From: Iphione sp. A-MEVVRFRX5
Lineage: Eukaryota
Assembly (NCBI GenBank): GCA_976226885.1
Contig: OZ320319.1
Span: forward strand, 19,282,001 to 19,346,000
Length of the DNA stretch: 64,000 bases
Reading direction: 5' to 3'
Part shown: positions 13,872-64,000 of the stretch, one piece after another
Numbering within the stretch: position 1 is the first letter of the stretch
Layout of the letters: the number at the start of each line of letters is the position of its first letter
Translations under genes and position numbers: made by a program
Notes under the pieces: generated by a model
What the model saw: only the letters and a program-made list of their open reading frames with translations
Told to the model about the DNA's origin: nothing
The model's database searches: none

Positions 13872-13976
13872 GTGTGATACCAGGATAAGGAAGCGACTGT
13901 AGAGGGAAAGATAGGACATAAAGGCCCTGAAAAGGGGGGTAGGTTGAACGGTTAGAAATCTTCTGTCATCATTATC

Positions 13977-14110
13977 AATGGAGGTCACATCTGCGTTTAC
14001 CATGTGCGGTAGCAGATGGTGTGACCTCCATTACTAGAGCGGGGAAAACGCGAAAATGGGGGAGGAGCCTGTTGTTTGATCTTCGCGCCGGCATGGAGGC
14101 TCGGCCTCCA
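13977..14110 (+). other. Candidate Helentron 5' terminus: long hairpin plus second short hairpin
   Basis: AATGGAGGTCAC...ATCTGC/GCAGAT...GTGACCTCCATT (13977-14032) and TGGAGGC-TCG-GCCTCCA (14094-14110). Both are conserved at 9167-9226 and 9289-9305. Confidence 0.7.
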
Positions 14111-15136
14111 AGTACGACTAAGCTTTCGGTTACGATTTGTCATGTAATCTTTCGTAATGCCCCCATGAAGGGTTGAAGTGTTGCCTGGGCGGTTTTGTGG
14201 GAGTGCAGATGTTGTGCGCTCCTGGTGAGCGGGAGGGACGCGGGTGGGAGCTGGAGTGCAGATGTCGCGCGCTCCTCGTGACCGAGAGTGACGCGGTTGT
14301 GTGTGCACAGTTGCGTAATGATGAGAGGTCCAGCGTGATTGACACGTTTATGGGAGGAGACGAGGGTTTAGGAGGATTTCTGGCGCTGGTTGAGCGACCG
14401 GAAGGAGTGACCCGGCTGTTTCAGGTTGAAGCGTCGTTGTGTTACTATGGTGATGAAGTGGAGGCTGTAACGGAAGGAAGTTAGGTGCGAGTGGAGGCCG
14501 TAGCGGTAGAAAAGTTCGCGGGACATTCAAAAGCAGTTGTTTTATCGGCGTTTTTGTTATACTTAATTGTACTGGTCTGTATTCTTTTTAAATGTTTACC
14601 GGCTCAAATTCAATTTTTTAACAAATCGAGTTAATAAACACTTCCAGTTATAAGTGAGAATTAAATATAGTTATTTGTGTGAAGTCGAAACTAGTTTCAA
14701 GTGATGAAAGAATTACAGTAGATGTTTGGAAAGGTTAGTTGAATTAAGGATCGTAGCAGCTGTGCGTGTACTGAACGATTTGGGTTAGTGTACGTGTTTA
14801 TTTTTGGTTCAGGGGAGGGAGAACTTGACTCTGACTGGTCCGGCCGAAACAGGTTGCAACAAGTAGGAGGGCTGCCGGGTATGCACGTAACCTTGGGGTG
14901 CGAGCCGAGGTGGATCCGTCGGCAGGTTGTTGTTCCATCCGGTAATGCGAATGATTACTTGCCTTGGGGACGAAAAATCCTCAAGGTATTTCATTGCCAT
15001 TTGGTGCTTGTTACAGTAAAAAGGGAGAAGTAGGAGTTTGTGAATGTTTCGGGAAGACTGTTGGTGTATGTAGTTTTGCAATGCATTAGCGGGTATGAAA
15101 CACAAATGACATCTATTGAAGCATTTCGATTCGTTA

Positions 15137-15219
15137 GCGCTGCCATCTGGTGTCAAAGTGGCTAACTATGGTGAAATGTCAAAGTGTCCACTTCGATTGG
15201 TCAGTGCTGCCATCTAGTG
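15137..15219 (-). promoter_or_regulatory. Two tandem CTCF-like motifs in a ~67-bp duplication
   Basis: Reverse complements are CACCAGATGGCAGCGC (15137-15152) and CACTAGATGGCAGC (15206-15219), matching the CTCF core. Confidence 0.5.
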
Positions 15220-17898
15220 TTGAAGTGGCGAACTATTGGGAAATGTCAAACTGTTTGATTTTTGCCAATGTTTGTTTGAAGTGAACTTTGCAAAGTTTGA
15301 GATAGGTTTTAACTTTATGGTTCCATTCGTGTGTGTTTGAATGTGGTGTATGTAATCGTTAATGTCTTATATTTGGTGTTGCAGGGTTTGCTAAAGAGGT
15401 ACCTCGGTTTGTATGTGAAAACGTTAGTAATAAGATGCTCGAGTTGGTAATTGAAGTAGATGTTAAGTGGTAATTGTGTTTCTGTTATGTTGTGTTCTAA
15501 TAGGATGTTAAGGTGTTTATATAGGTTAAGGACACAGTATAGTGTGTATTAGTTTCAAGATGAGTGTCATACGAGTGTCAGTTTGAGGGAGTGTTTTGTG
15601 TGATATTGTAAGTGCCTTGAGATATATTAAAAGCAGCAGGAGATATTGTGTACTAGTTTTTATTTGAATAAGTGCAGCACTTGGGGGATGATAGGAACAG
15701 AGCAGGTGTCGGTGACATCGAGATACTTTTCGATCGCTGGTACAAGTGTGTATGTTATGAGTCAACGTGGTTGGCGCCGGTATACGTTGTTTCTGAAACA
15801 TGGAAGTATAATCGAGGAGTAGTTTGTACAAGGTATAGTTGAATGGTAAAGCTAAAAATCAAATTACTCTAGATAATTGAAGTTTTGGTTTTCCCGTGTT
15901 TACTGGTAGGTTGTTGCAGTTATGCTAGGTTGTATCAGTTAAACTGGTGTTAGTTCGTCCATTTTCCACCAGAGTTGATTGAGTTAAGCTATCATTAGTT
16001 CGTTTATTCTCCACCAGACTCGATCGTGGTGTTTACGTTCATGAGGTGGAGGTTTGGCGGAGAGATTTAATAAAATGGCTTTATGTGTATTTGTGAGAAT
16101 ATGCAGTAGTGTAAGTTCTGTAGTGTATGTAAATAATGATTAAGATAACTCATAAAATGGAAAATATAAGTATTAACTGGAAAGTATATAGATCTCTGCA
16201 AATGAGTTCTAAAGACACCACTTGCATGTTCGGTTAAGTTGTATATACTGCTTTGTATGGTTCGGTTTGACATGTTTTCCGGGATGGCTTCTCCCTTGGT
16301 TCGTTGGAGGGCTGCCCGGACACTTAGTGTTTAAGGACGGATTCCACTTGGATTGCCCAGGTCCGGTAGTACTCTGCGTGGTGTTGCCGGCAATTTTTGT
16401 ATAGGGTCGCTGTGATTAGCGGCCTGACAATGAATTAAAGATAAACTTCTTAACTGCAGTGTTACACGTATGAAGTTGTAATATTGTGTACCTGCGTCGT
16501 GAATTACAGGCGCATAATGGAGATTGTCATTGAAGAATTATAAAGTAATTCTGTTTGTGTATCGCAAGGCCCTTGTGTTGTATTACAAAGGGCAAAATAT
16601 ATATGCAGAGGTGATTAACAATGGACGTAAACGAGTAAAGCAAGTTCGATGAAGTTGTACGTGTTCTGAAATTTGAATATTGTTTTAGACCATATTATAA
16701 ATGTTCAGAGTGAATTTGTGAATTGATATTGTGGTAGAATAGTGCAAGCCATAAGTGTGTAGCTGCGGCTATCTATTACAAGTGTGAGGTGATATGATGG
16801 ATGAATGTATAAAGTACAAGAATGCAATAAACGTTTTTCATGAAATTGTTGTATTTGTTGTTTGTTTAGTGTAGTTGTAAGCGGTACGTATTAGTCTGTA
16901 AATGGAATGTATGGAACATCACTTAACATATTTGAACATTGTTCGAGTTTAGTATGGAACATTACTTAATGTAATTGAAGATTGTTCGAGTCTAGTATTA
17001 TCGGAATAATGCATAAGTCGGCGTCAATTTTGTGTGAGTTTTGGGGTTTGGTGGGTAGAATTTGTCAATCACTCAAGGCGTTATCGATAAGGGATCATGG
17101 TGTTAAGGAACAAGAATGTAAATTAGGTTCGAGACTAATGGTTTGGTGGTTACATATACGTTTTGTTTTGGTGTTTTGTAAAATTGGTATGATGTAAATA
17201 TATAGGTTATGTGGCAGATATCAATAATTGGAAGTTTACTACAATGAAGTCAGTATGGGTTTTCATTGCAGATAACTAGATTATGAGGTTAATATAAAAG
17301 TCAAGTAAGCGTTAGGTTGGGAGTAAGTGTAAATGTGTAGTGTATTAACATTGACGGGATTGGTTTTTCGGTGAGAAGTCAACAATATGTTTAGAGTTGC
17401 AACCAGTGTATACAAGAAAGATTATAGCACGTGGAAGATGATGGTGTGAGGACATCTAATCGAGACGGCAGGAAATGTAGTCATCAGTAGCATCTTCAGT
17501 CATGCGATCGTCGGAGGTATGGTGCGGATTCAGGTTTCACAGCAATAAACTTTGTTTTGGAAGAAATAGTGTTTAGTTTATCTTTAAGTTATAGAAGGAA
17601 TTCGTAACGGAATTTTGGAAATTCTATTCTTTCTCAGCTAGTTGCATAATGCAATAAGTTATATACGATTTGTGTTTTAGTTTTTTTCAAGTGATTTGGT
17701 TTGGTTTTACTACTAATGGTAATATTCAAATAGATGTTTTAAAAATTGCAGATAGTGCGCCTTTTTGTTCTGGAAAACGTAGTGGTAAAGTTCCTTCTAA
17801 ATTCGCGTAGGCGCAGGAATGGTAATAGATAGAAGTAGCTGTAGTAGGCAAAGTAAGAGCTACAAGTCGTATTAGTTTTAGATCGGAATGACATATGG

Positions 17899-18628
17899 TA
17901 CTATGGCGTATTTCTAAGGTTTACATAAAACTGAGCAACGATGAAGTGGAAGATATGTGGTTTTTATTCAGAGAAACGAATTATTGAGGTTATTAGAATG
18001 GTTTTACATACAAAAAAACGTATACAGTAGTAGATGTTGGTGACACAGTTGTGTATAGTCGATACAGAATTTAAAGTAAGGCCTAAACAAAAAATATCTG
18101 TGTTTCCGGTAACCCGACCGACCCTTCATTAGACTCTATTGTGATATTTTTTTTTTTCTTGTTTTTTGAATAACTTTGGCATGAATAATGATAGAGACAT
18201 GTTCTATACCTCAAATTGTTCTTTAGTTTTCTGGCTTCCATTTGACATATGTTTTCTTAAAAATCTAACCAGTATAAGTAATATTGCCATACACATCTGT
18301 TGCTTTCAGCGTTCTTTTACAGTGAAAAATAAAGAAAAAAAAAATATGTGATGTACCGACCGACCCTGTATTTTTTTAGCCTGTTACCGGAAACACAGAA
18401 CTTTTTTTTGTAGGCCTAAGGCGTAGTACAAAGTACTATGGCGTATTTCTAAGGTTTACATAAAACTGAGTAAAGATGAAGTGGAAGATATGTGGTTTTT
18501 ATTCAGAAAAACGAATTATTGAGGTAATTAGAATGCTCTTACATACCAAAAACCGTATACAGTAATAGATGTTGGTGACATAGTTGTGTACAGTTGATAC
18601 AGAACTTAAAGTAAGACGTAGTACAAAG
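17899..18628. repeat. ~195-bp tandem duplication interrupted by a MITE
   Basis: tactatggcgtatttctaagg... occurs at 17899 and 18434. The units align end to end once 18080-18419 is removed. Confidence 0.9.
18080..18416. mobile_element. PIF/Harbinger-type MITE (337 bp)
   Basis: TIRs GGCCTA...TCTGTGTTTCCGGTAAC / GTTACCGGAAACACAGA...TAGGCC, with a TAA target-site duplication (18077-79, 18417-19). Confidence 0.85.
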
Positions 18629-20169
18629 AACAAATCAAGATGTAATACAATTGTTTGGCAATAAGTAGTAAAGCACATATATGCAACGCGTCAAGCGAAA
18701 CACCACATTTGACAACACCGGGAATAGAAACTTCAGTAGGTATTCAGTCCAACATTGAAACAGGGTTGGTTATGTTCAATATGTGATAAAGTACCAGTAG
18801 GTGCGGTTCAGTGTACGTCATTGGTTGGCGGTAGCGCCAGGCGTCAATTTAGTTTTATATGTATTAACCGAGGTGTGGGTTTGGGGGATAACTTGATAGT
18901 AATGTAATAGTATAAAATAGAGCTTGTCTAGTGGGAGTACGCGAGGTTGTGAACAGGTAATAGAAGGTGCTGAAACAGGAAAGTGGTCTCAGGGTCAGGC
19001 GTATTGCACCAAACCATTGTTAAGGAAGGATAGTGTTGTAACTCATTGAATGAATCGTATGTACATATCGTCCTTATGAAATAACAATATAAGAGACTCA
19101 GTAAACGGAGCATAGAGTACCGCAAACATATAGTATATATTTACAATCGGTAGAAAAGTTCGTTGGCAAGGTGTTGTGTGTGATATTTTACATGACACCA
19201 CCTATGCAGTGTTTCTATGTGTTTTTCAACTTCGCAGAAACTGAAAACAGTATTTGTAGTTCTTGGTGTACTAGATACTTGCTAGGAAGTCGTACTAAAT
19301 TTGGATACTACATTGTGTAATCGTTGGTCATCGTAGTTCAACTAAGTTTTAAGTGAGCTTAGTTTTGTTCACCATTGAATGAATTTTTGAATTGTACAGT
19401 GCATTCAAAGATGTATATGACGATATACTAAATATTCAGGGAGTATTAAGTATATTGAACAGTTTTAGAAGCTTCTTGAAGTCTAGAGTAGTTTTATAAG
19501 GTGGGGCGCATTTAGTTAGTAATAACAAGTGAGGTTACTGTTTTCACGTTGAAGGAATGTTTTTGTATTGTACAGTCTTTGCAAAACGTTTTTCAGAATA
19601 GAGTAAATACACAGGAAGTTGTAGTAAAGTGATTAAATACTATAAGCTGATACAAGTGGAGAGTGTTATTAGTGGGTTGGGTGATGTTCAATAGGTCGGT
19701 CGGTGAAGGGTAGTGTTGTTTTGCATGAATCAAAGTGTAAAAAATTACAGCGTTGCATAGGTTAGTATATAAGATAAAGTGTAAGGAGAGGGAGTAAAGG
19801 AGTCTGGCGAACATTTTCAGAAGGTGATAAGAAAGGCGTGAGGTGTTCGTGTGTGTTAGGCATAGAGTACCTAAGTGATGTTACAGTTAAGGATATTGGT
19901 GTTGTTTTCAATGTTGTGTATGTATTGTGTTTGAGGGGTTTCACCAGAAACAAAAAGTGAAGGAGGAGTTTGTGGAGTTAGGTTAACGGTAACCTGAAGC
20001 TACTCTCACTTGAAATAGGTTTGTATGAATTTGGTGGAGCAAAGGCCAAACTCAAATTGTGGGTAGTCGCGTCGCTAGTAATGAGTTGGAATAGTAGTCT
20101 TTGTATATATCTATATATAAATTCAGAGGGAAATTTTATAGGAAGCAATGTAGCAGCTTAGTGCAATAG

Positions 20170-21350
20170 TGTGTAAGACAGGAATAGGGTTCCAGTTTGG
20201 ATTCGGGATGATAGGTGGAGGCGCAACAACAGTTCCCTTTGTTTTGGTCGAATCAATAAAAGTTGATCGATATATAGGCAGGAATTGGGTCTTGTTTGGA
20301 AACGGGATGATAGGTGGAAGCGGAACAACAGTTGTTGTTGTATTGGTCGAATCAATAAGAGTTGATCGATATATAGATAGGAACCGGGTTCCAGTTTGGA
20401 AAGGTGATGATACGTGTAAGGGCAACAACAGTTGTTTTTGTATTGTGTTGAATTAACAAATGTTGACAGATATAGTCTTTTGTCATGGTGGGTGTGTTTG
20501 TTGGTTATTGTAGTTGAACAAAGTCTTAAGTGAACTTAGTTTTGTTCACCATTGAATGAATTTCTTTGTGTCATACACTGTTTTCAAAGTTGTCCAGAAG
20601 AGATAGTAAATATACAGGGAGTATTAAGAAGTAGAAGGAGAGGCTCCAACATTGGATGACTGACCTGTCGAATCAATAAGAGTTAATAGATATATAGACA
20701 GGAATACGGTTCCAGTTTGGAAATGGGATGATAGGTTGAAGCCAGGAACAGTAGTAGGAGAGGCCCCAACATTGGATGACTGTGAACTTAGTTTTGTTCA
20801 CCATTGAATGAATTTCTTTGTGTTGTACACTGCTTTCAAAGTTGTCAAGAAGAGATAGTAGATACATAGAGAGTATTAAGAGGTAGAAGGAGTGGCCCCA
20901 ACATTGGATGACTGACCTGTCTAATCAATAAAAGTTGATAGATATATAGACAGGAATACGGTTCCAGTTTGGAAATGGGATGATAGGTTGAAGCCAGCAA
21001 CAGTAGAAGGAGAGGCCCCAACACTGGGTGACTGTAAACTTAGTTTTGTTCACCATTGAATGAATTTCTTTGTGTTGTACACTGTTTTCAAAGTTGTCAA
21101 GAAGAGTTAGTAAATATACAGAGAGTATTAAGAAGTCAAATGAGAGGCTCCAACATTGGAAGACTGCATGTGCTGAACCAATAAAAGTTGACAGATATAT
21201 AGACGGGAATTGGGTTCCAGTTTGGAAATGGGATGGTAGGTGGAAGTGTAGCAACAGTTGGTGCTCAAGTCGAATCAATAAAAAATGATAGATATACCTT
21301 GTTGTCCGTGCGGGTGTGTAAGCGTTGGTCATTGACTTGAAGTAATTTTA
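20170..21350. repeat. Composite tandem array: ~99-bp units, then ~252-bp higher-order units
   Basis: aggaat..ggttccagtttgg occurs at ~20180, 20280, 20379, then at 20700, 20952, 21204 interleaved with a ttagttttgttcaccattg block. Confidence 0.9.
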
Positions 21351-21377
21351 AGTGGGTTTAGTTTTGTTCAAAGTTGA

Positions 21378-22145
21378 ATGAAGTTTTTGTATTGTACAGT
21401 GTTTCTAACGTTGTACATGAAGATATAGTAAATATATAGAGAGTATTAAGAAGTAGAAGGAGAGGTCCCAATATTGGAAGACTGCATGCATTTAGTTTGC
21501 TGGACTCTATTGCACATACAATGGGACCCCTAATGTTAAGAACTACGCTCATTGTAGAGTTTTTACAAGAATAAGACCACAATGTGGAGGAGTGGACCAG
21601 TTTGCTGAAAAGGAGCAGTGGACAGGAAGTCAATGAAGTTTTTGTATTGTACAGTGTTTCTAACGTTGTACATGAAGATATAGTAAATATATAGAGAGTT
21701 TTAAGAAGTAGAAGGAGAGGTCCCAACATTGGAAGACTGCATGCATTTAGTTTGCTGCACTCTATTGCACATACAATGGGACTTCTAATGTTGACAACTA
21801 TGCTCATTGTAGAGTTTTTACAAGAAGAAGACCACAATGTGGAAGAGTGGACCAGTTTGCTGAAAAGGAGCAGTGGACAGGAAGTCAATGAAGTTTTTGT
21901 ATTGTACAGTGTTTCTAACGTTGTACATGAAGATATAGTAAATATATAGGGAGTATTAAGAAGTAGAAGGAGAGGTCCCAACATTGGAAGACTGCATGCA
22001 TTTAGTCTGCTGCACTCTATTGCACATACAATGAGACTTGTTGACAAGTACGCTCATTGTAGAGTTTTTACAAGAAGAAGACCACAATGTGGAGGAGTGG
22101 ACCAGTTTGCTGAAAAGGAGCAGTGGACAGGAAGTCAAGTGGAAG
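21378..22145. repeat. 255-bp tandem repeat, ~3 copies
   Basis: gaagtcaatgaag occurs at 21626 and 21881. The ORF track shows an 85-aa period. Confidence 0.92.
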
Positions 22146-23601
22146 TCAGTTGGACGGACTGAAATAGAAGGAAAGGTCCCAACATTGGACGACTGCATGC
22201 AATTCGTTAATTGCACTGTACTTTACATCCAATGGGACTTTCAACCTTGACAATTTTACTTTCGAGAGCTTTTACAAGTAGAAGACCATACCAGGAGCAG
22301 TATGCTAACATTTTCCATTTAATACAATGGGATTTTGAACCTTGACAACTTTTGTTTTGTAGAGTTTCACAAGAAGAAGACCACAATGTGACAGAGTGGA
22401 AGAGTTTTTGAAAAAGGAGTACAGGATGCCAACAACTCATAGTACGTTGACAGAAAGATTGTAAGCATTAAGTGAGTTTGCACTGTACTGTATATACAAT
22501 GGGACGTCTAACTTTGAAAGTTTCAATTTTTAGGTAATTGTTTCTTAACTATGTGAGTCGGACAATTTGCATACATGGCGTCTTTTTGACTTGCTGTATT
22601 ATATCAGGGACGAAGAATTATTACTGAAGTCAAAGAAGGACCACGTTGTGGAAGAGTCGGCTAAAATAGAAGGAGCAGACATCGATGTGGAGGAGTCAGT
22701 TGGTCACAAAGAGGTAGAACATATGGACGTAGACCATAATGTGGAAGAGTCGGCTGAAAAAGGAGCTGCAGACATTCATGTGTAGGAGTGACTTGCTCAG
22801 AAAGAGGGGGCAGCAGACTTTGATTAGGAGTAGTTGTTGGTATAAAGAAGAAGAATACTCTCATGTGGAAGAATCAACTTGTGGAAGGCGGATTGTGTTT
22901 ATTTTATGGGTACTTATGTGTTAAGTGTTTGTGTTTGTGGGTTCCGGGTTTTGTCAATGAAAGATTTACCATTTGCCCAACAGTCTGGTGTAGTACACAT
23001 GACATATATGTGAAAATCTACCAAGAGAAACCATGAAAAACAGCGGAAATATATGTGGTGAAGAAGAATTTGTTCGTTAGAAAGTGTAGTAGGAAGATGG
23101 TTATGGGTAGACCTGTTTAAGTATATGTGTGTAAGTTTTTGGGGTGTTACTGTTGGCGAACAAATAGTATAAGAGATGGTATGTACACCAATAACTGGCA
23201 GTTTGCTTAATTAACCAGTATCGGTTTGTTTTTGTTACATGTTGTAGTTGTGTTTAACTCATTGGATACTTTTTTGTTTTTATCTAGGGAGTGCGGTGGG
23301 TTAAGGATTTGTTGTCAAAGAAAGATTTTACTATCGGCTAAAAGATTCATGTAAAACATACGATACATATCTGAAGATTTACCAGGAGAAACCACGAAAA
23401 ACAGTGGTAATTATTGTTCAAGAAGAACTTGTATGTTACAAAGTTTAGTAGGAGAATGGTTATGGGTACCTTTGTTAAGTGTATTTGTGTATTTATGGTG
23501 TACTACATTGGAAAACAACTTTTAAAACAAGGTATGTACACAAAGTCACCTGGTAATATATACTACGAAGGCAGTCGGTCGTGATAAAATAGTTACGCTT
23601 C

Positions 23602-23982
23602 ACTGTGTCACATGTTTGAGTTTTGTCAAACTCATCGCACACATTCTTGTTCCAATGTAGGGAGTGTGCGAGGATGTGTAAGCAGCAGATATAATTGAGG
23701 GACATGTTGTGTGTATGGATGTTTAGTGTTGTAGAATAGTTACTGTGTCACATGTTCGAGTTTTGTCGAACTCATCGCACATATTCCTGTTCGAATCGAG
23801 GGAGTGTGCGAGGATGTGTAAGCAGTAGATATAATTGTTGAGGGACATGTTGTGTGTATGGATGTTTAGTGTTGTAGAATAGTTACTGTGTCACATGTTC
23901 GAGTTTTGTCGAACTCATCGCACACATTCTGTTCGAATCGAGGGAGTGTGCGAGGATGTGTAAGTAGTAGATATAATTGTGG
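23602..23982. repeat. ~140-bp tandem repeat, ~2.7 copies, with internal hairpins
   Basis: actgtgtcacatg occurs at 23602, 23742 and 23885. Confidence 0.92.
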
Positions 23983-24369
23983 AATAGGTCGTGTGCTGTA
24001 TGTTTCATGTAGTAAAAAGTATGTTTCATGGTATGTATACTGAATACAGCAGTTGATAGGTAGGAAATAGAGGTTATGCAAGGATATTGTATGTTAAGTA
24101 GTTTTGTTGTGAGGACAAAAGGTTTCTGTATTATTATACTTTATGGGTTTTAAGGTGTTTGCTGGTGTTTCTAGTGTAGTATAGAAATGAGGTGAGGACG
24201 GCAAGTTAAATGCAATTCAAATGAAGACAATGATATTTTATATAATTTGTGGAATTTCGAACGAAGTGTAGGCACGAAGTTGTTCAGGACGAGAAGAAGG
24301 CTGTAATGGATATGAATGAACTGGCAGAACACCATTTATATTAGTAAAAGTATTAAGCAAAATATGACC

Positions 24370-25420
24370 ATTTGTGTAATAAAGGTAGGTGGGACAGTAG
24401 TACACCTGATAAGTGTAAGCTGGAGTTCATAATATAGTACATCTTTGCTAAAAGTGAACCAAGGGATGAAAACGTAAAATGGAGTGTAAAGGCTTAATGA
24501 AAGAAAGTGTGATGATATTTAATTTGACAAGTGTAGGAAGGGGTATCTGGTAATGAGTTTTTTATGTAAACGTGAACCAAAGGATGAAATTGTATAACCA
24601 AGTCTACAGCGTAATAGAGTGCAATAAGCGTAGTAGTATAAAAGGAATGTGGTAGTACGAGGCGAAAGACATAGTGCATAAATGCTTAGGAGTATGACAA
24701 GAACAGGATCAGAAGGAAGTTGCAATGGGCATGAATGAATTGTCGCTTTCTAGTAACTGGTACTAGAAAGCGACAGCAAGATGTAAGTTTTAGTGTAATG
24801 AAGGGAGGTGGGATGGTGTTCGTTTGATAAGTGTAATTCGGATACCACGGAGATGGAAGTTTTAGTGTAATTAAGGGAGGTGGGACGGTGGTACATTGGA
24901 TAAGTGTAACTTTGAGTACACGATATAGTTTTAGTTATTGTAAAAGTGAAAGAAGGGACCAAAACGCAAAATGGAGTCTAGATGCGTAATGAAGGGAAGT
25001 GAGTGGTTTCGTTTGGCACGTGTAAGCTGGAGTATACCATATAGTTTTAGTTGTGTTATCTACGAGTTAATGTAGAGACTGTAGTGATAACTGAGGCATA
25101 GTGTAACGAAGGTAAGTGGGACGGTATTATATCTGACAAGGTTAAGTTGAGTACACGATGTAGTTTAGTTCCGATTTAAAAGTGAACCAAGGGGACAAGG
25201 ATTTTAGTGAAAGAATTAGAGATTAAGAACCGGTCGAGAAGAAGGTTGCAATGAATATTGTTCAACTCGCATAATACTAGTAACGTGCACTGGAATGTGT
25301 CAGGTAAAATCTAGGCTTCAGCGTATGAAGGAAATTGGGATTGTATTTTCCTGACTAGTGTAATATGAAGTATATGATATAGTTTTAGTTTTTTCCTAAA
25401 AGTGAACTAAGGGATAAGGA
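24370..25420. repeat. Diverged array of gggaggtgggatggt...gataagtgtaa / aaaagtgaaccaaggg modules
   Basis: Related motifs at about 24382, 24803, 24875, 24994 and 25109. Confidence 0.7.
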
Positions 25421-25494
25421 TTGAGTGTATTCATGAGAGAAAAAATAGCTGTGAAGGTAGCCCAAGAATGTGAGTTGGATTATTACAGCATTCT

Positions 25495-25715
25495 GTAGAG
25501 GTAGGGAATTTAGGAGATAGTCTGAAGAAGGCATTGATCAAAGAAGCATTGGCATTGATACTTAGGAACTTGAACAATGTAAGGGAAAAATTTATGCAGG
25601 AGCATAACATTCGGTAGAGGTAGGGAATTTAGGAGATAGTCTGAAGAAGGCATTGATCAAGGAAGCATTGGCATTTATACTTAGGAACTTGAACAATATA
25701 AGGGAAAATCCATGC
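25495..25715. repeat. 119-bp tandem duplication (diverged third copy near 25980-26060)
   Basis: gtagaggtagggaatttaggag occurs at 25495 and 25614. Confidence 0.9.
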
Positions 25716-42183: not shown

Positions 42184-42246
42184 GTTAACGTGCTCAAATT
42201 CTGCTACTGGCGGGTAATTCTAGTCAGTACGTTGACAGTTTGGAAG

Positions 42247-51825: not shown

Positions 51826-53734
51826 ACAAGAAACAAAGAAATGGTACATCCCTACGCTGGTGTATACTGAGACGCTAAGTTTACAACTGAACTGATAAGA
51901 ACAGGAGGTTGGGTGACCAGAGAATGGTGTTCGGTTTTATTGTGTGCAGAAGGCGTTAATATGTGTTTGTAGAAGAAGTTTCAGACTGACCATACGGAAC
52001 AGACCGATGGTATGATGGTGTAGGCAGTTACGTTAAGTTTAAACGGATGTGTTGCGCACAAGTGAGGAGATAAGATTGCAAGTGAACTGTGTTGGCCACG
52101 TGTTTCACTAATTTGTGAAATAGCTTTACATGATTAGCTAATAATGAACACGGATAAAAGTAGTACGTATTAGGCGGTGAAGTTGAAAATACTAAACATT
52201 TTGAGTTCTTATAAGTTGGTATGTTTTCAACGTATTTTTCAAACAGAAATACTAGCTTGATACGGTTTATTTGTAGAAAAGTCTAATGAATTGGTGCCCA
52301 TGAAATTATATTGAATAACGGTTAATCAGCAATAAGTATGGAACCTGGCAGTAGTACTAGTTGTTCTGAAATGTGGCAAGACAATGGCATATAACTTAAC
52401 TTGGAAAAACTTTTGGAATTGTGTAGGAAATAGTAAAAACTGATTAAAATCAATCATTAAAAATAAGTTGTGATAATTCAATATCCGAATGTGTTATTGA
52501 TTACAAAACACAGTAAATATGTTAGTTAAATTCAGATTATTTAATCTATAGGAATTGCTTTAATTTTTGTTATAGTAAATACAACTTAGGTAGACAGAAC
52601 ACAATAGGTTGAAGTTTTCTCTTTATTTAATAGTTACATCCGTACAAGTCAGACAGTTTTATACAACATATGTAGGGTGAATGTTTGTACTTTGTTCGGA
52701 AGTTGTAGTTGTACAAATTCAAATAATTTAGTACGTATCTATAAATGGTTACAACCTAACGACCATCGAATTTCTCTTAATGTTTTAAAAGGCAAGTTGT
52801 AGTGAATGTCTAAAAACTTTATATACTATAGTTATGTATCCGTCAATTTTATAAACTGATTATATCAGACATCTTAAAACATGTGTTAAAATACAAACTT
52901 ATTGTGAGAAGCGTACCAATTTTCTACTGAAAGAAACTAATCTAATATGTTGTTTGGATTTTGTATTACGACTGCTAGTCTACTCTAAACCATTCAGAGA
53001 ATAAAATAACTATAATAACGGTCTTATGAGGAATCTAATTTTATTAAAATAATGAGTCAAGTAAATCAGCTGTTGTATCATTTTTAAGACACTATCGCTA
53101 TAGGCCAAACAAGTGAAATTGTCAATTGCGACATTAACAGTGCCTACCAACACAACACAGCCGATTGGGAATTAGATGATCTCTGAATATATATTCAGTA
53201 TTTAATGTTTATGCAAAATCGTATGTTCATGTACATTTATATTATTTCCGATTATGTCAATGACAGTCAAATAATATGTAAGGACAGTTCAGTTCTTGCA
53301 AAATATCGCTCGACTAGAATATATCAGTAAGAAACTAATATTTTTCGTATTGTAAATAGTTGTTCATTTGAACCTAGTGTTACACACTTTTTGTGCTTAT
53401 AAAAATACATGAGCAACTCATGTCATGTAATACAGCTTCAAAAGTTTAAAGATGATTTAGTTAATAAAACATAAACGCAGTACCATTACAAGTGAGTTGT
53501 ACTATCATGTCTACATAAAGCATACACGACTACAAATAAACTACTGTTCTACTATAATCAAACGGTTCTAACTGTGTCGATTGTCTTCCTGTATTCATAT
53601 ACTTGGATATGTATAAGAACAAAGACAATAATACAACACACAAATATAACACTGATTTTAACGGACAAAATGAATGTAATAGAGTCAATTATATGACTAG
53701 TACAAGCATTTGATACATAACTGGTTTATACAGT

Positions 53735-55160
53735 TCAGCATTCATCTTCCCAAGCTAAATCGATAGGAGGATTTCGAGAACATGAAGCCGAAAGCCGGGT
53801 TTCGAACGACTTTTGTGCATCTTTTATAGCCGTGATGTCTGTTTCAACATTAGAGAGCGACTGCTTTGTTTTGTCGTGGCCATTTAGTAAATAATTAATA
53901 GCGTTATGGTGTTCGATCGCCTCTTGGTTCATCTGTTGTATTTGGCTTTCTAAGTAGCTGTTTTTTTTCTGAAGATTCAATACCGTCATCCGCAAGTGAA
54001 GAACGTCCGTTGATAAGGTTTGTACAAGTTCGTTAAGTAAACGAACGTTGTCATCTGCAAATACATACAATAAACCTGTAAATTGTTTGCTGTATTTCAA
54101 AATTAGGAAAAAAATTAACAATGTATAACAATTTTGCTGCACTAACAACTGTGACAACTGTTAGGTGTAGTTAACTGGTAAGGATCAATCGCAGGTTACA
54201 AGAAACTTGGCTTCAATGTTTTAGTTCTTGGCGTTTGAATGTGATAAAACTTTTACTTTAGTTGTTAGAGATTGCCTTATTTAAGACGTTTAATATTTGT
54301 GCAAGTTATTTTCAGGTCCATCTTATTTACTTAAAGAAAATTAGAACTAGACAACTCCTACATGAATAACTGTATGTTGGCTATGGTCGAAGAAGTATTA
54401 CAAAATCATGTTCACATTGAAATATAACTTACAGTTTGTGCAATTTCTCGCTATGGACGTTGTCACTGTGATTTGCATTTGGTCGCTTGATGCACTATCT
54501 GAAAAGATGAATACCAATATGCATAATAGTCAAGTATTTATGTGTGAATCATAGTATTTACTTAAACACTTAATAGATAATAATAAGTGTTAGTTTCACT
54601 AAATTTAAACTTCTGCAGAAAAATAGTACGTTTTTTTTCAGTTTATAATTAGATATTCGGCAACAAATTGACATGATAAGTTCTAAAGGGTAAATCTCAA
54701 GATAACATGTCTTAGTCGTATGTACTCTGTCTTAGTTTGATCAATTCTGAGTGCTTGAACAAGTCTATCGATCTTAGTTTACGGAACAGACTAACAAAAA
54801 CAATAAACAAGTATTTCAATAATTTTGGAATTATGAATGTATGAGTTAGACAATCTATTTCGAGTGTACAATTCGTCTCAGGCAAATAGTAAATGATGTT
54901 GTTGTCGTAGTCGACATGACAGGAAGTCTTCATCATAAAACACTACTACATTAAATAACAACCGGTGTCGTTGGCTACTGTGGATTATTTCGAGAGCAAT
55001 CGAAACGGAAGAATTCTTTATGGTTCTAAAGAAACTATGATGTTGTATTGCGTCTAGTATTCATCACATACTTACGTGTAGAATCTGCGTGGGTTGTTGC
55101 GTTAACTGGTGGGCTGACATAAACTGGAGTAGGATGTACTATAGTGCTTCTGTCATCCAT
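53735..55160 (-). CDS. Coiled-coil cargo gene Y, 134 aa; exons 55160-55076 and 54054-53735
   Basis: ATG...ACAC|gtaagt phase 1 joins atttgcag|AT phase 1, total 405 nt. Paralogous to gene X. Confidence 0.72.
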
Positions 55161-56587: not shown

Positions 56588-58553
56588 TCATTTCTTTTCC
56601 CGGCGGCAACAAACACTGTCAATAAAGAGTTGTAATTCATGTAGCCAGTGATGTATGATATAACGAGGAATTTCATCATCACGCTTAAGTAGTTCATGTC
56701 TAAATATGATGTTGTTTTCTTCTACACCATTTAATGGTAAACAAGTGTCCGGGGTGGTGTAGCCATTTTTATAGTTCATAGTTATTGCTAAACTATTTTT
56801 GGTTACAATGTGGTGGTTGAGTTTGATCTGTTCTCGTGACTTCGGGTGTCCAATTTGCATACCATGGATAGGAAGGAAAATTACATGCTGCATTTTTGAG
56901 GTTACAAGTGTATTGACAATAGTGGTCATGTTGATCCAGGCATCATGCTTCAAGGCTGTAGCTGACGAATACGTAAGTTTGTATTTGTCTTGAAATATCG
57001 ATACTAGATCATCAAGGCCCAAGTATACTAATGTAATATTGGTGTCAATCATTTGTAGCCGGTGAATTTGTTTAATGACATCTTCAATGCGTCCACTAGG
57101 AAAGATTATAGTGGTCCAGTCATACAAGTGCCCAAGAGTGTTCTCCACAATTCGGCTGAAGTCTTGGCCTCGCGTGTCTGTCACCATTGTTACTTTCGGT
57201 TTTGTGTCCATCTGCAGAAAGCGAATTTTTTTTGTATAGTACATAATATTTTGTTAATGAAATCAACAGTTTGTTCAATTTGTAACAAACGGGAAGAATT
57301 GAAATAAGCAATAGTTATATCTCTACCGACATATAGGTTACTTCTACACAATCCATGGAATGCAGCTAAACAACGCCATTATATAATACAACAAAACTGT
57401 ACGTTCTGATTGAATTTCAAATAATGTGATATTTGTTAGATAGAAGCAAATATTTCTGAAATTCCTCCCATCACTATCACTAAAAAGATATGAAGTATAT
57501 ATTTTTTTCATTAAGAACACTAAATGTATGATTCGGCCGTATATAGTTCTACAAAAACAGCGTCAGTTGAATTACAACTTGTACTTATTTATTACAACCA
57601 TTTCGTTATTATAGCAGTTCTATAAAGATTCTTGTAACTTATCACACTGTCGTGGCTGTCAAGGTGGCGGCGTGGTTTTATATAGCCATTATCGAATAGC
57701 ATAACTGAGTGTGAACGTGGCGAGTAGTGGTTTCTCATTGAATACAGGTAATGTTTGTTATACACTTTGTGGTCGGTGCGACATGTATGTTCAATGGTAA
57801 AAACAAAAACTGAAACAAGTCGTTAGTAATCGTAGGTACATATGTTGTCGAGTAGTAATGAACTATCTCTGGATCGAAATTTATCATATACGTTTACAAA
57901 AAGTTTGCTTAAGGACAGCTGGTAGAGAACATGTATCCAAATCAGAGCTGGGCACCCAACAAAAAGTTGTCGCGTTTTTTAACCTCCTTGTCGTAAAAAT
58001 ACAGTTAGTTCGGTACTGAACCAGTGGAAAACAAAAGAGGGTTGTCGCATTCTTTTCAGTCTTTGACGCATGTTTTTAGCGAAATGCGACAGGGTGTCCA
58101 GTCCTGCAAATTCTCTGACATTGTAGTGTTGGTGAAAACCAATGCGTTTTACCGAACTACTGTTTGGATAAAAGTGTTCATTGGTATTTAGTGGTAATAC
58201 GAATTGTTGTTTTCTAACTAATTTTGTTCATTGGAAAATTAATCTTCTGTTGTAAGTTTCCAGGAGTGATTAAACTTACTTTAATTCAATTAAATGCAAA
58301 TAGTATTTACCTTGTAATGACAATATGCTCGCTTAACGTCTTCCTGGTAGGAATTTCGTTTGGTCCAACTGAAGTAGTGTTTGTAGCAGCACGACGTTGA
58401 TACATCTACTGGGCTTTGCGTGTCTCCTACTGATACAGTATGCTGTGCTGATTCGTTGAATCTTACACGCACGTTGTGCGCATGCGCTTGAAACTTGTTA
58501 GAGAATTTAAGAAAAGTATTGGCAGCTAAATTGAGTCTTGTATCGATGTTCAT
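56588..58553 (-). CDS. SGNH/GDSL-fold protein, probably catalytically inactive; exons 58553-58311 (tentative) and 57211-56588
   Basis: Block-like motifs VTDTRG (DSRG type, Ser to Thr), FPSG, YLGLDD and RDDEIP (no DxxH His). AAG|gtaaat and ctgcag|ATG are both phase 0. Confidence 0.6.
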
Positions 58554-61083: not shown

Positions 61084-62022
61084 TTACTTTTTGATTTGTT
61101 CAACAACAAAGTCAATCGCTTTCTGAACTTCAGTCATTTGCTGTTGCAACATTTCTGTTTTGTGTGCCACTTGTAACAGTCCTTGTTCAAACCCATTTAC
61201 TTTCTTTAGTGCATCAGAAACTTCTTTATGAAGAACATTAACTTCGGCGTGTACAACGGTTAATCTAGTGGTCAGTATCGCTGCTTGCTTGTCTGTACAA
61301 CCCCTATGGTCGATCTGAGTTTGCGCTATTTGAGCTTGCAGTGTGTTTAGACTTTGGTGTAAAAGTGTTATTCTTTTATCAATTGATTCACTTTTCATAT
61401 CTTTTAGTTCGAGAATTCGTTTGGCATTCTGTAAAACACATACTTGGAGCTGTTTTATATGTTGTTGTGCTGTATAAAGCGAATGTGCAGATTTGTCACT
61501 TTTATCACGTCTTGGTGACTTGTGATATGTAACTTCTTCCAGTTGTGCTGGTGGTTGACATGGCTTTTGAAATAGTCGTTTAGGAATCCAACTAGAAACT
61601 AAGTTTTTGTTCTGTTCCTCTACCACTTTTTCCAGTACATTGCCACCATTGGAACTACTATGTGTAGATGGACTTTGATTGTCATCACCTAGCTTAACAG
61701 TTTCTACACTTTCACTAATTGGTATCAAAGTGTATACTATTTCATCTTCACCTGCTATCATTGACTTTTGCTGTTCACCTGAAACAGTGCTTGTTGGTGT
61801 CCTCGAATGCTTTTCATTGCTTATACTTCTAAATAGTTGACTAGTTCCTGAAGTACTAGCGCCTGGTTCAGGCGTTTCAGAAGATTGCTGTGAATGTATG
61901 CAAACCGGACTATCGGATCTAATCACTTGTCGTGATAGTGGTACGACTTCTGTAGTTTCTGGACCACTACTTCCTTCTGTATCTTGTTCGTACAAAATAG
62001 CAGTCTGCTCAGTCATCTTTGC
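61084..62022 (-). CDS. Cargo gene W exon: Ser/Thr-rich disordered N-half plus long coiled coil (~310 aa)
   Basis: ctgcag|GCAAAGATG acceptor and a 310-codon ORF. It ends either at TAA or at donor AA|gtaagt (61087). Confidence 0.7.
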   Translation of the reverse strand, partial: AKMTEQTAILYEQDTEGSSGPETTEVVPLSRQVIRSDSPVCIHSQQSSETPEPGASTSGTSQLFRSISNEKHSRTPTSTVSGEQQKSMIAGEDEIVYTLIPISESVETVKLGDDNQSPSTHSSSNGGNVLEKVVEEQNKNLVSSWIPKRLFQKPCQPPAQLEEVTYHKSPRRDKSDKSAHSLYTAQQHIKQLQVCVLQNAKRILELKDMKSESIDKRITLLHQSLNTLQAQIAQTQIDHRGCTDKQAAILTTRLTVVHAEVNVLHKEVSDALKKVNGFEQGLLQVAHKTEMLQQQMTEVQKAIDFVVEQIKK

Positions 62023-62336
62023 CTGCAGTTCATCCGAAATAGGGAACCCTAGTTCAACGGAAAAATAAGTTTGCGGTAGTATTTAGTATGTGGTGTATGT
62101 ACAACATACATGTAGATATATCACAACAGTTTACAATCGGTCAGAACAATTCCTATTGAGAAACTAATATTTTATACATGAACTTGTATACTTTTTTTTT
62201 AATACAGTATTTACACTGGAAGATTACAGTCATGTGCTTATTGTGATCCAGTTTGTTCTAACTTTGTTGGTTCACTATGATACGTACAGATGATAAATTA
62301 TTCTATGGTATGTATGAGCATTAATGATGATGAATC

Positions 62337-62843
62337 TTATGTACGTGTGAATCTGGTAATACAATTGCATGTTGCCATCTGGTCTTTTATCACTTTGCTG
62401 TGAAATAGATTTGTGTCATATGTATATTGTAGTTTGCGAACCGTCAATATGTACCCACCTTCCGCATCCATAACTTTTTTCCATTGCAGCCATTCTTGTG
62501 CTACTTGTTCATCAGTTTTAAACTTCGACCGTCTCGGATAAGTAGGCGGTAGTCCTACTTCTGAAAGAAAACATTTTTAAAACAATACGTTTCGACTACT
62601 TCACAGTAATGTAGAGTTCATTCAATGATTTATTTTCAAATACAATCAAGTTAAACACCTGCCAACTTCTATTTGGAATTTTAAAACCAGAATTCATCTT
62701 TGAAAAACTTTACTATTGGACACAGTACCTGCTCTTCTCTCTTCACGTCTGGCAGCAGCCATTAGTCGGTTGTGGCGTTTATATGCTTCGTATCGTTCAA
62801 ATGCTCCTGGTTTTTTAGTTTTTACCGGATGCTTTTTTGGCAT
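62337..62843 (-). CDS. Small two-exon basic protein, 112 aa; exons 62843-62729 and 62560-62337
   Basis: caccATG context. GCAG|gtactg phase 1 joins tttctttcag|AA. Translation MPKKHPVKTKKPGAFERYEAYKRHNRL...QEWLQWKKV...; no family recognised. Confidence 0.6.
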
Positions 62844-64000
62844 GGTGTTGTACTAAAAATCAAATAAAATATCCAATTAAGAAACATATTAACTGTAATA
62901 TATAACAACAGAGTTCACATTAGTTCAAACTGTATATTCTGTTAGATAAATCCTTTCTTTACAAAACAGGTAAACGTTCATTTAGCTTCTCAGTCTTTAT
63001 CCTAAAGTTATTCCCACGCTAAGTTAAACCGTTAAGAACCGTATGAATGCATGAACTACTGCTGCGCTGGAACCGTATCATATATTAGTATTCTATAGTA
63101 TAAAGTGGACAGTGTAGTGATTTACGAAATTAACAACTTTCGATTTACTAAGTCACAAATACAAACTACTTTTATTGCTGAACGACGTTTCTAGGTTATA
63201 CGGCATGTAATCACTAGAAAACACAAATTTCACCTGATTTAAACACAGGTGTGGATTAAGCATCGATACCAGTGCTACTAGAAATGAGCTATAGTGCATG
63301 TTATACATCAATTTCGACGTGCGGTTGAACCGCTTGAAATAATATTAAGAATATTGTTAATTGACACGTATCTTCATCAACTGTTTCACAACTGTATAAT
63401 AAAAAGACTAAATATATGTGTTCAGATGCATTTCAAATTGAGATTTCTAGTAACCTATACGTACATTTCAAAACTTAAACTAAACCATTCAAATAATAGA
63501 TTTGAACAAAATAGTAAAATACTTACTTACTAGTCACAAACGAGTGAAGATATGTGTACACAGACGTACAACTGTTCAACACTTAATGACCACAAACTGG
63601 TTAAGTGTTCTGTCTTGTAGGGCGCGCGTACTAGATGGAGATTAAAGGCGTGGTTAGTCTTACAACTACTTGAATATTCATGACTTTAACTGACCAATCA
63701 CAAAACAAGAAGTGAGCACGGGTTTATGTAACACGCCTACAATTCGTCTGTAAAGGATGATGTTGACCATCTGGCCTTTTATGACCTTCGGTTCTGCTTG
63801 GTTGCATAGACAAAGGTAGTGATACTCCACTGTATGTAGTAAGAAGGGCTATTTAGTCAGGGTCCACGTCCGGACTTCCTTAAACGACGTTTTATATGTG
63901 TAGTGTAATTCTGTCAAACAGTTGGACTGTTGAAGGGGTGTTACTGCGTGGTGGTTCCCGGAAGTCTCTTGATTAAAATGTTCAAAAAATGCCGCTACTG

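What the first reader, a model, noticed from the sequence alone, without database searches (positions are those of the whole stretch)
13952..64000. A >=50-kb multi-gene Helentron: rolling-circle element of small-DNA-virus size
Seen: a terminal hairpin at 13977 homologous to a complete small HINE, an intact Rep-Hel-EN gene, a spliced RPA-like gene, at least six spliced cargo genes with their own promoter-like motifs, and no recognisable host housekeeping gene in 50 kb. Known: Helentrons carry Rep/PIF1/endonuclease and sometimes RPA or proteases, and described autonomous copies are typically much shorter. Inferred: this is one giant self-replicating unit with a dedicated accessory gene set. No capsid gene was recognised.
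Basis: partly seen in the sequence, partly recalled or inferred. Interest (0 to 1): 0.92.

Follow-up and report, generated by a model that had tools for sequence, protein, structure and literature searches.

The report
Large intact Helentron with strand-skewed body
The window holds an apparently intact rolling-circle transposon (Helentron) whose body, marked by a strong one-strand loss of cytosine, spans about 32-39 kb: near the largest known of its kind, but not shown to be 50 kb or to carry a dedicated gene set.

Summary
A Helentron-type 5' hairpin lies at 13977-14032. It is homologous to the 5' end of a small non-autonomous relative (HINE) at 9140-~9999. An unbroken 2129-aa OTU/DUF6570/Rep/PIF1/endonuclease ORF lies at 35188-41577. 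A four-exon OB-fold (RPA/SSB-like) gene lies at 42247-44414. Five small spliced minus-strand gene models have no database relatives.

The RepHel-sense strand is strongly C-poor (GC skew +0.3 to +0.5) from the 5' terminus to about 45.85 kb. The skew is weaker (+0.15 to +0.25) to about 52.7 kb and near background beyond. RepHel and RPA fourfold sites share it. Three nested MITEs and five related Helentron loci do not.

I read this as one Helentron of 32-39 kb. That is within the known range (Repbase maximum 39,893 nt). About 18 kb of its 21-kb 5' region shows no coding signal. No 3' terminus exists in the window. "At least 50 kb" and "dedicated accessory gene set" are not supported: three of the five orphan genes lie outside the skewed domain, and only the RPA-like gene recurs beside a related RepHel. 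No second copy could be fetched, so the bounds remain inferred.

The parts
9140..9999 (+). Small non-autonomous Helentron relative (HINE-like). It has a 5' subTIR at 9167-9178 with partner arm at 9215-9226, ~71-nt central tandem repeats, a 3' subTIR at 9966-9977 and a palindrome at 9978-9993. It contains the N run 9753-9952, which was left untouched. The 3' end is approximate.
   Evidence: structure as defined in PMC4067079
13952..14119 (+). 5' terminal region of the large element, 73% identical to the 5' end of the small element. The start is good to about +/-15 nt. An apparent extension of homology back to ~13884 is not significant (P = 0.13).
13977..14032 (+). 5' hairpin made of the subTIR (13977-13988) and its inverted partner (14021-14032), with an inner stem.
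   Evidence: -18.8 kcal/mol, z -6.2; 0 of 200 shuffles fold as well
14094..14110 (+). Second short hairpin, conserved in the small element at 9289-9305.
14120..32084 (+). Long C-poor 5' region without a convincing coding signal. Tandem arrays lie at 15125-15254, 16909-16998, 20176-20474, 20530-21258, 21377-22138, 23602-23980 and 25489-25719. Diverged ~500-bp repeats lie at 24.3-25.9 kb.
   Evidence: Pfam negative
18079..18417 (.). Nested MITE-like insertion with 35-nt inverted ends; GC skew -0.10.
28058..28508 (.). Nested MITE-like insertion with 47-nt inverted ends; GC skew +0.02.
29540..29770 (.). Nested small insertion with short inverted ends (bounds approximate); GC skew -0.01.
32085..32377 (-). 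Terminal coiled-coil exon of gene model g32. The 5' exons, somewhere up to ~33.4 kb, are unresolved. It is a paralogue of the last exon of g54 (about 30% identity).
33909..34020 (.). Promoter-like region upstream of RepHel: a divergent CCAAT pair (33909-33916 on the minus strand, 33926-33933 on the plus strand) and a TATA-like box near 34008.
   Evidence: sequence motifs only, no expression data
35188..41577 (+). RepHel-EN transposase ORF, 2129 aa, unbroken; first ATG at 35218. Domains: OTU-like protease, DUF6570, HUH Rep, PIF1 helicase, AP-endonuclease-like.
42247..44414 (+). RPA/SSB-like OB-fold gene, 383 aa. Four exons: 42247-42572, 42861-43014, 43245-43466, 43965-44414. CCAAT boxes at 41915 and 42064; TATA at 42145.
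48918..51155 (-). Gene model g49, 297 aa, four exons, coiled-coil C-terminus, no relatives found. Promoter-like TATA near 51272-51281, a CCAAT box at 51346, and a 108-nt upstream repeat in three copies.
13952..52700 (+). Strand-asymmetric compositional domain, my best estimate of the element. The core, 13952-~45850, has GC skew +0.33 to +0.47 in non-coding DNA. A second tier, ~45850-52700, has lower and patchy skew (0.05-0.37 per 400 nt; +0.15 to +0.25 in the g49 block from 47.4 kb). The right edge is supported between 52297 and 52916.
53735..55160 (-). Neighbour gene model g54, 156 aa, three exons, outside the domain (intron skew +0.08).
56588..58553 (-). Neighbour gene model g57, 288 aa, two exons, outside the domain. 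Its 221-aa ORF has no relative among 1.84 billion representatives.
61084..62843 (-). Neighbour gene model g61, 393 aa, three coding exons, outside the domain. A copy of the ~70-nt TATA motif lies at its promoter (63850-63915).

Best explanation
This is one autonomous Helentron (Helitron-like element group 2), inserted about 80 nt downstream of the stop codon of a host short-chain dehydrogenase gene.

Anatomy, 5' to 3':
- a terminal region with the family's subTIR hairpin (13952-14119);
- about 18 kb of non-coding, tandem-repeat-rich DNA with three later MITE insertions;
- a small minus-strand coiled-coil gene (g32);
- a CCAAT/TATA promoter region;
- the intact OTU/DUF6570/Rep/PIF1/endonuclease gene;
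- a four-exon OB-fold single-strand-binding gene.

This core ends near 45.85 kb. A further block carrying g49 (to ~52.7 kb) shares the element's signature more weakly. I read that block as DNA joined to the element later, for example by read-through past an earlier 3' end, which is the usual route of Helitron gene capture.

Shown: the parts, their integrity, and a common cytosine-poor RepHel-sense strand from the terminus onward.

Inferred:
- that the skew marks the unit's extent;
- that it arises because this is the strand a Rep/PIF1 enzyme peels off, so it is repeatedly single-stranded and loses cytosines (C>T and C>G);
- that the 3' terminus is lost, diverged or unrecognised.
For: - Terminus: the hairpin and 168 nt are homologous to a complete HINE-like element, with a compensatory stem change. 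No second terminus-type hairpin or subTIR lies between 14.2 and 35.2 kb. There is no second RepHel fragment in the window.
- Coding: RepHel is unbroken with its catalytic columns kept. Its relatives are bivalve-type Helentron proteins at up to 38% identity.
- RPA-like gene: the splice model is open. Exon 3 matches an ORF about 2.4 kb upstream of RepHel in L001 (E = 1.5e-6). The two-sequence profile hits RPA/SSB folds.
- Unity: GC skew rises at the terminus and stays at +0.3 to +0.5. Values by part: RepHel fourfold sites +0.31 (n = 755), RPA fourfold sites +0.36, RPA introns +0.44, g32 intron +0.42, RepHel upstream region +0.47, g49 introns +0.25, g54/g57/g61 introns +0.03 to +0.09.
- Nested MITEs have skew -0.10 to +0.02, so the skew is not simply a property of the place.
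- Five related Helentron loci have fourfold skew within +/-0.1.
- Copies of four tandem arrays differ 3.2 times more often at C than at G sites (P = 1.8e-4). Both C>T and C>G are in excess. A and T sites are equal.
- In Helraiser, only the plus (top) strand is cleaved and peeled off (PMC5876387).
- Size and terminus-to-Rep distance (about 23.6 kb) lie inside the catalogued maxima (PMC11417382).
Against: - No 3' subTIR plus palindrome exists anywhere right of RepHel, so the element is not bounded on both sides.
- The right edge of the skew is stepped and patchy (45.85 kb, 52.7 kb, a weak step at 59.7 kb), not sharp like the left edge.
- The ML left change-point falls at 13554, inside the G-rich last exon of the host gene, so coincidence with the terminus is good only to a few hundred bases.
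- Paralogous coiled-coil exons (g32 and g54) and the ~70-nt TATA motif occur on both sides of 52.7 kb. That fits either capture from a local gene family or a longer element.
- No other copy, empty site or transcript could be examined. The host genome and its near relatives are absent from the searchable collections.
- The single-stranded-DNA origin of the skew is an inference. Related Helentrons lack it.
Confidence: 0.55

Rival explanations
1. One reading: a single Helentron of at least 50 kb runs off the right end of the window, and all the small spliced genes are its own accessory set.
For: - No 3' terminus lies in the window.
- The ~70-nt TATA motif and the coiled-coil paralogues lie on both sides of 52.7 kb.
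- Weak positive skew (about +0.1) persists to ~59.7 kb.
- None of the genes right of 44.4 kb has any known relative.
Against: - The signature shared by the terminus, RepHel and RPA drops to background-like values after 52.7 kb. Introns of g54, g57 and g61 have skew +0.03 to +0.09, and the 58.6-61.1 kb spacer has +0.01.
- Left-flank host windows vary by as much, from -0.16 to +0.22.
- None of the orphan genes is found beside five related RepHel genes.
- The length would exceed every catalogued Helitron-like element.
Confidence: 0.15
2. There are two or more elements in a row. An ordinary-sized Helentron (about 34-46 kb: promoter, RepHel, RPA-like gene) has unrecognisable ends. It lies downstream of an unrelated long non-autonomous or truncated HINE-like element that owns the 13952 terminus. 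Both are in the same orientation and of the same skewed lineage.
For: - Typical autonomous elements are under 12.3 kb, with the terminus under 5.3 kb from Rep.
- The small element at 9.1 kb is also G-skewed (+0.26), so skew may be common to this lineage's members.
- 14.5-32 kb has no coding signal and consists of satellite-like arrays of the kind HINEs carry (PMC7492417, listed).
Against: - No subTIR, terminal hairpin or 3' palindrome lies anywhere between 14.2 and 35.2 kb to end one element and start another.
- Skew is uniform across the supposed junction; no supported change-point falls within 14.1-35 kb (lnL gain 3.3).
- A terminus-to-Rep distance of 23.6 kb is within the known maximum of 27.5 kb.
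Confidence: 0.2
3. The skewed block is a property of the chromosomal locus, for example very heavy one-directional germline transcription or a fixed replication direction. The Helentron merely sits in it, so the skew says nothing about element bounds.
For: - Transcription- and replication-linked strand asymmetries are well known (established knowledge).
- Array copies that may have diverged in place still show the C-site excess.
- The right edge is gradual.
Against: - The magnitude (+0.4) is many times the transcription-linked skews reported in animal nuclear genomes (my own knowledge, not tested here).
- The skew is indifferent to gene orientation: g32 and g49 run against it.
- It begins within a few hundred bases of the element's terminus.
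- Three insertions inside it have no skew.
Confidence: 0.1

Closest known systems
Helentrons (endonuclease-encoding Helitron-like elements, HLE2 subgroup b) of bivalves, mites, mosquitoes and fishes
   Same: - One large protein with OTU-like protease, DUF6570, HUH Rep, PIF1 helicase and a C-terminal AP-endonuclease-like domain.
- A companion OB-fold (RPA-like) gene.
- A 5' subterminal inverted repeat with an adjoining inverted partner.
- A non-autonomous HINE partner nearby.
   Different: - At most 38% protein identity to any relative found.
- Terminus-to-Rep distance is about 23.6 kb, against under 5.3 kb in 75% of catalogued elements.
- No recognisable 3' end.
- Strong strand asymmetry, absent from five related loci.
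- The RPA-like gene lies downstream on the same strand here; in L001 it lies upstream on the opposite strand.
DINE-1 / HINE non-autonomous elements
   Same: The 9140-~9999 element has subTIRs, a 5' inverted partner, central tandem repeats and a 3' palindrome, as defined in PMC4067079.
   Different: It is only 73% identical to the large element, over 168 nt of the 5' end, and its subTIR differs by one base. It is therefore a related family, not a deletion derivative of this copy. Its middle is masked (N run).
Large gene-capturing Helitrons (Repbase maximum 39,893 nt)
   Same: Tens of kb in length. Host-like genes sit in both orientations inside the element. The suggested stepwise growth at the 3' side fits end read-through capture (capture model from PMC4067079).
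   Different: Those are mostly non-autonomous group-1 Helitrons carrying gene fragments. Here the element is autonomous and of group 2, and the inner genes look complete but have no known relatives.
Strand asymmetry of animal mitochondrial DNA and other replicons with a long-lived single strand
   Same: One strand is rich in G and poor in C, with much weaker AT skew. The bias is also seen at fourfold sites. The mitochondrial comparison is from established knowledge.
   Different: This is a nuclear, integrated transposon. The excess is cytosine-specific (C>T and C>G) with no A/T-site asymmetry. No replication origin is known.
Giant cargo-carrying mobile elements (Starships, Mavericks/Polintons, Teratorn)
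   Same: Tens of kb in length, with genes beyond the transposase.
   Different: The transposase type is different. No capsid, packaging, polymerase or integrase gene was found in any ORF tested. I did not test these families beyond Pfam.

Membership tests
Helentron (HLE2) | RepHel protein with an HUH Rep domain and a PIF1-type helicase | tested here: met
   Helitron_like_N E = 1e-28; PIF1 E = 4.8e-23. HxH at 941-943, Walker A at 1460-1467 and DE at 1548-1549 are invariant against 12 relatives.
Helentron (HLE2) | [quoted passage not shown] | tested here: met
   Exo_endo_phos scores 23.4 bits (E = 5.6e-5), just under Pfam's 24.5 cutoff. N1921, E1948, D2059, N2061 and D2098 are invariant against relatives, several of which carry PF03372 or PF14529. 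Met, but marginal by score.
Helentron (HLE2) | DUF6570 domain (marker of group 2) and an OTU-like protease | tested here: met
   DUF6570 E = 2.6e-18; Herpes_teg_N (OTU-like fold; the name does not imply a herpesvirus) E = 2.2e-7. Marker status from PMC11417382.
Helentron (HLE2) | Companion RPA-like single-strand-binding gene (frequent, not universal) | tested here: met
   Open 4-exon model. Relative beside RepHel in L001, E = 1.5e-6. The profile hits RPA/SSB folds, best E = 0.0039. Pfam alone is sub-threshold.
Helentron (HLE2) | 5' subterminal inverted repeat with an adjoining short inverted repeat | tested here: met
   13977-13988 and 14021-14032; homologous to the HINE 5' end.
Helentron (HLE2) | 3' subterminal inverted repeat followed by a short palindrome | tested here: not met
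   No plus-strand match with 2 or fewer mismatches right of RepHel. No hairpin preceded by a subTIR-like sequence in 41.6-64 kb. It may lie outside the window, be lost, or differ from the HINE's.
Helentron (HLE2) | Insertion within TT without target-site duplication | tested here: inconclusive
   The homologous region begins TTAGAAAT in both elements. Without a 3' end or an empty site the target cannot be read.
Helentron (HLE2) | Repeated in the genome with the same ends; empty sites exist | not testable with these tools
   The host genome is not in any searchable collection. Best protein hit is at most 38% identical. Pattern scans gave only chance bacterial hits.
HINE / DINE-1 (the small element at 9140) | subTIRs, 5' inverted partner, central repeats, 3' palindrome, no coding capacity | tested here: met
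   The 200-nt N run hides part of the middle.
   No 3' terminus. The shared skew ends near 52.7 kb.
Virus-like replicon | Capsid or packaging gene | tested here: not met
   No such Pfam family in 36 ORFs of 71 aa or more. Orphan proteins could hide one. AF2 models were too poor to search.

The most novel reading that the evidence does not exclude
The cytosine-poor RepHel-sense strand may be the accumulated footprint of the element's single-stranded (peeled-off) phase. If so, this Helentron lineage has taken most of its substitutions while replicating or transposing rather than while sitting in the chromosome, as a virus-like replicon would. The stepwise fall in skew (+0.4, then +0.2, then +0.1 or less) would then date successive 3' read-through captures of neighbouring host genes. 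Skew would become a sequence-only ruler for the extent and age structure of rolling-circle elements.
Probability: 0.2. Interest if true: 0.8.

Novelty: new variant of a known kind. Interest (0 to 1): 0.5.

Why it matters
Helentron ends are hard to find, and autonomous copies are usually mapped only within 10 kb of the transposase gene (the default window of the current annotation tool). This copy has its 5' end 21 kb upstream, so elements of this type can be under-called.

Suppose the strand asymmetry really tracks the transposed strand. It would then be independent, sequence-only evidence for which strand moves in group-2 elements. So far that is shown only for a group-1 Helitron. It would also give a way to see how much flanking DNA an element has taken up, and in what order.

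If the asymmetry is only a local oddity, the finding is a large but otherwise ordinary Helentron.

Tried and rejected
- Second RepHel fragments in the window: tblastn with the window's own protein and 40 relatives found none.
- 3' terminus: pattern search with up to 3 mismatches, blastn-short with both HINE ends, and two hairpin scans found none.
- Extension of 5' homology back to ~13884: not significant, P = 0.13.
- Other copies: protein searches with RepHel, g61 and RPA exon 1, a representative search with g57, and exact-pattern scans of metagenome and genome contigs with the 5' hairpin arm. The six pattern hits are bacterial, lack the partner arm, and match the number expected by chance.
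- Pfam on 36 ORFs outside RepHel: nothing above threshold. The coiled-coil exons give only sub-threshold RasGAP_C-type hits.
- PDB profile search with the g32/g54 exon pair: only non-significant coiled-coil matches, E of 0.086 or higher.
- AlphaFold on RPA exon 1 and on g57 as single sequences: pLDDT 45 and 39, too poor for a fold search, so none was run.
- Rfam: no family.
- APOBEC-like context preference: no TC or CC bias in dinucleotide ratios or in array differences.
- The 255/252-bp arrays as coding repeats: the periods are multiples of 3, but stops occur in every plus-strand frame, and the long minus-strand ORF is what a G-poor strand gives by chance.
- A complete splice model for g32: the candidate first exon is out of frame with the last exon, so it is left unresolved.
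- Nested-insertion ends around the low-skew patch at 45.8-49.4 kb: none found.

Method note: array differences were polarised per column by the 2-of-3 state and only counted. Consensus lines printed by the alignment tools were not used.

Full report
**1. What is in the sequence**

The window is animal DNA.
- Its left 14 kb holds Death-domain ORFs (4067-5247, minus strand).
- It also holds the last exon of a short-chain dehydrogenase (13338-13868, stop at 13869-71).
- Two N runs (9753-9952 and 12138-12306) were left as they are.

- **Hairpin.** The arms 13977-13988 and 14021-14032 are exact complements. Together with an inner stem they fold at -18.8 kcal/mol (z = -6.2).
- **Homology to a small element.** 13952-14119 is 73% identical to 9140-9313.
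- **The small element is HINE-like.** It carries every landmark that defines HINE/DINE-1 elements (PMC4067079): subTIRs at both ends, an inverted partner next to the 5' subTIR, central ~71-nt repeats and a 3' palindrome.
- **Structural constraint.** One stem pair differs between the two elements by a compensatory change.
- **5' boundary.** An apparent extension of homology ~65 nt further left is not significant (P = 0.13).

**2. The transposase and its companion**

The ORF 35188-41577 has 2129 codons with no stop or frameshift seen.
- Pfam finds an OTU-like protease (under the family name Herpes_teg_N), DUF6570, the Helitron Rep domain and PIF1. An AP-endonuclease-like C-terminus scores just below threshold.
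- Against 12 relatives, 221 columns are invariant. They include the HxH motif, Walker A and B, and the endonuclease catalytic residues.
- The nearest proteins in 5.8 billion are at most 38% identical. The named ones come from bivalves.
- No second RepHel fragment is in the window.

Downstream lies a four-exon gene (42247-44414) behind two CCAAT boxes and a TATA box.
- All its introns are GT-AG, and the joined exons read open for 383 codons.
- Pfam gives only sub-threshold OB-fold hints.
- Exon 3 matches an ORF ~2.4 kb upstream of RepHel in the related locus L001 (E = 1.5e-6).
- A two-sequence profile brings up replication factor A, SOSS-B1 and archaeal SSB as 11 of the 12 best PDB matches (best E = 0.0039).

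So "RPA-like" holds, at modest strength.

**3. The other genes**

Open, ATG-to-stop, GT-AG models can be drawn for four minus-strand genes:

| Model | Length | Exons |
|---|---|---|
| g49 | 297 aa | 4 |
| g54 | 156 aa | 3 |
| g57 | 288 aa | 2 |
| g61 | 393 aa | 3 coding |

A fifth, g32, can be drawn only for its last exon.
- Most end in a coiled coil. The last exons of g32 and g54 are about 30% identical.
- A ~70-nt TATA-containing motif recurs at 30380 (+), 43872 (-, inside RPA intron 3), 51512 (-) and 63850-63915 (-), with a partial copy at 29419 (-).
- None of these proteins has any relative. g57 gave 0 hits among 1.84 billion representatives, g61 gave 0, and Pfam gave nothing.
- None appears beside five related RepHel genes.
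- From 14.5 to 32 kb there is no convincing ORF excess over composition-matched simulations.
- That stretch is tandem arrays, three MITE-like insertions and unassignable C-poor DNA.

**4.

The plus strand, which is the RepHel sense strand, is strongly C-poor. Non-coding DNA of 14.5-34 kb is A 0.30, C 0.12, G 0.26, T 0.32.
- **Left edge.** GC skew rises from about 0 to +0.3 to +0.5 at ~14.0 kb. The maximum-likelihood change-point falls at 13554 because the host gene's last exon is itself G-rich.
- **Right side.** There is a secondary step near 45.85 kb, the main change-point at 52714 (support 52297-52916), and a faint step at 59.7 kb.

Skew by part:

| Part | GC skew |
|---|---|
| RepHel upstream region | +0.47 |
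| RPA introns | +0.44 |
| g32 intron | +0.42 |
| RPA fourfold sites | +0.36 |
| RepHel fourfold sites (n = 755) | +0.31 |
| g49 introns | +0.25 |
| g57 intron | +0.09 |
| g54 introns | +0.08 |
| g61 introns | +0.03 |
| 58.6-61.1 kb spacer | +0.01 |

- The three nested insertions have -0.10, +0.02 and -0.01.
- Five related Helentron loci have fourfold skew within +/-0.1 and flat flanks.
- Among copies of four three-copy tandem arrays, differences fall on C sites 3.2 times more often than on G sites (30/93 against 24/187, P = 1.8e-4).
- In those arrays both C>T and C>G are in excess, A and T sites are equal, and there is no neighbour preference.
- Two full-text searches linking Helitron-like elements with GC skew found nothing. 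The library is limited, so this is not proof of novelty.

**5. Reading**

The shared signature ties the 5' terminus, the 21-kb 5' region, RepHel and the RPA-like gene into one unit with one history.
- Its indifference to gene orientation, and its absence from later insertions, argue against a purely local cause.
- The core is 13952-~45850 (31.9 kb). With the weaker g49 block it reaches ~52.7 kb (38.8 kb).
- Both figures, and the 23.6-kb terminus-to-Rep distance, lie inside the ranges catalogued for Helitron-like elements: lengths up to 39,893 nt, terminus-to-Rep up to 27,501 nt, helicase-to-3'-end up to 16,811 nt (PMC11417382).

As for mechanism, only the plus strand of the Helitron Helraiser is cleaved and peeled off (PMC5876387). 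A strand that is repeatedly single-stranded would lose cytosines. That explanation, and the idea that the steps in skew mark successive 3' captures, are inferences.

**6. What remains open**

- No 3' subTIR plus palindrome occurs anywhere right of RepHel.
- No second copy, empty site or transcript could be examined, because the host genome is not in the collections.
- The alternatives therefore stay alive: a longer element (0.15), two elements in a row (0.20), and a locus-level skew (0.10).
- The claims "at least 50 kb" and "dedicated accessory gene set" are not supported by anything I could compute.

**7. Verdict**

This is a real and apparently intact Helentron. It is large but within the known range, it has an unusually distant 5' end, and it shows an unusual strand asymmetry that appears undescribed. 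I file it as a new variant of a known kind, with interest 0.5.

Noticed in passing
window 13952-52700: Strong cytosine-specific strand asymmetry of the element: GC skew up to +0.5 and AT skew near 0. It is shared by fourfold sites of RepHel and RPA, and absent from nested MITEs and from five related Helentron loci. Tandem-array copies differ 3.2 times more often at C than at G sites, with both C>T and C>G in excess.
   Followed up: yes
window 29419-29452(-), 30380-30449(+), 43872-43938(-), 51512-51581(-), 63850-63915(-): A ~70-nt TATA-containing motif in five copies. Two sit at the promoters of minus-strand gene models (g49 and g61), and one sits inside intron 3 of the RPA-like gene. It could be a shared core promoter of a local gene family or the end of an unrecognised repeat.
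   Followed up: partly
window 18079-18417, 28058-28508, 29540-29770: Three MITE-like insertions with inverted ends and normal base composition lie inside the skewed domain. The first is flanked by a 188-nt direct duplication (17898-18085 and 18433-18620, 92% identical).
   Followed up: partly
window 5684-7272: Two identical 300-nt copies lie 891 nt apart, with 199-nt inverted arms (99% complementary) between them. This is either a foldback-like structure or an assembly duplication.
   Followed up: no
window 1-650: A 59-nt tandem array of about 10 copies at the left edge of the window.
   Followed up: no
window 4067-5247 (-): Two ORFs with Death domains (E = 4e-12 and 9.6e-5), presumably exons of a host gene.
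   Followed up: no
window 13338-13871 (+): The last exon of a host short-chain dehydrogenase (adh_short_C2, E = 5e-47). Its stop codon is only ~80 nt before the Helentron's 5' end, so the element sits in or just after the gene's 3' UTR.
   Followed up: partly
window 1-13200 versus 14000-64000: CpG observed/expected is 0.44-0.62 in the left host flank but 0.7-1.07 across the element and everything to its right. The right-hand 50 kb therefore looks unmethylated, or young, compared with the left flank.
   Followed up: no
window 24741-24775: A perfect 15-bp stem with a 5-nt loop inside the ~500-bp repeat region. It is unrelated to the terminal hairpin.
   Followed up: no
window 46200-47100: A GC-rich block (49-54% GC) with GGC/GCC runs that partly match the inside of the 28058 MITE (27-nt inverted match, 81%). 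It lies in a low-skew patch and may be another nested insertion, but no ends were found.
   Followed up: partly
L001 5805-9421 (-): In the closest related Helentron locus, the OB-fold companion gene lies upstream of RepHel on the opposite strand, not downstream on the same strand as in the window.
   Followed up: partly
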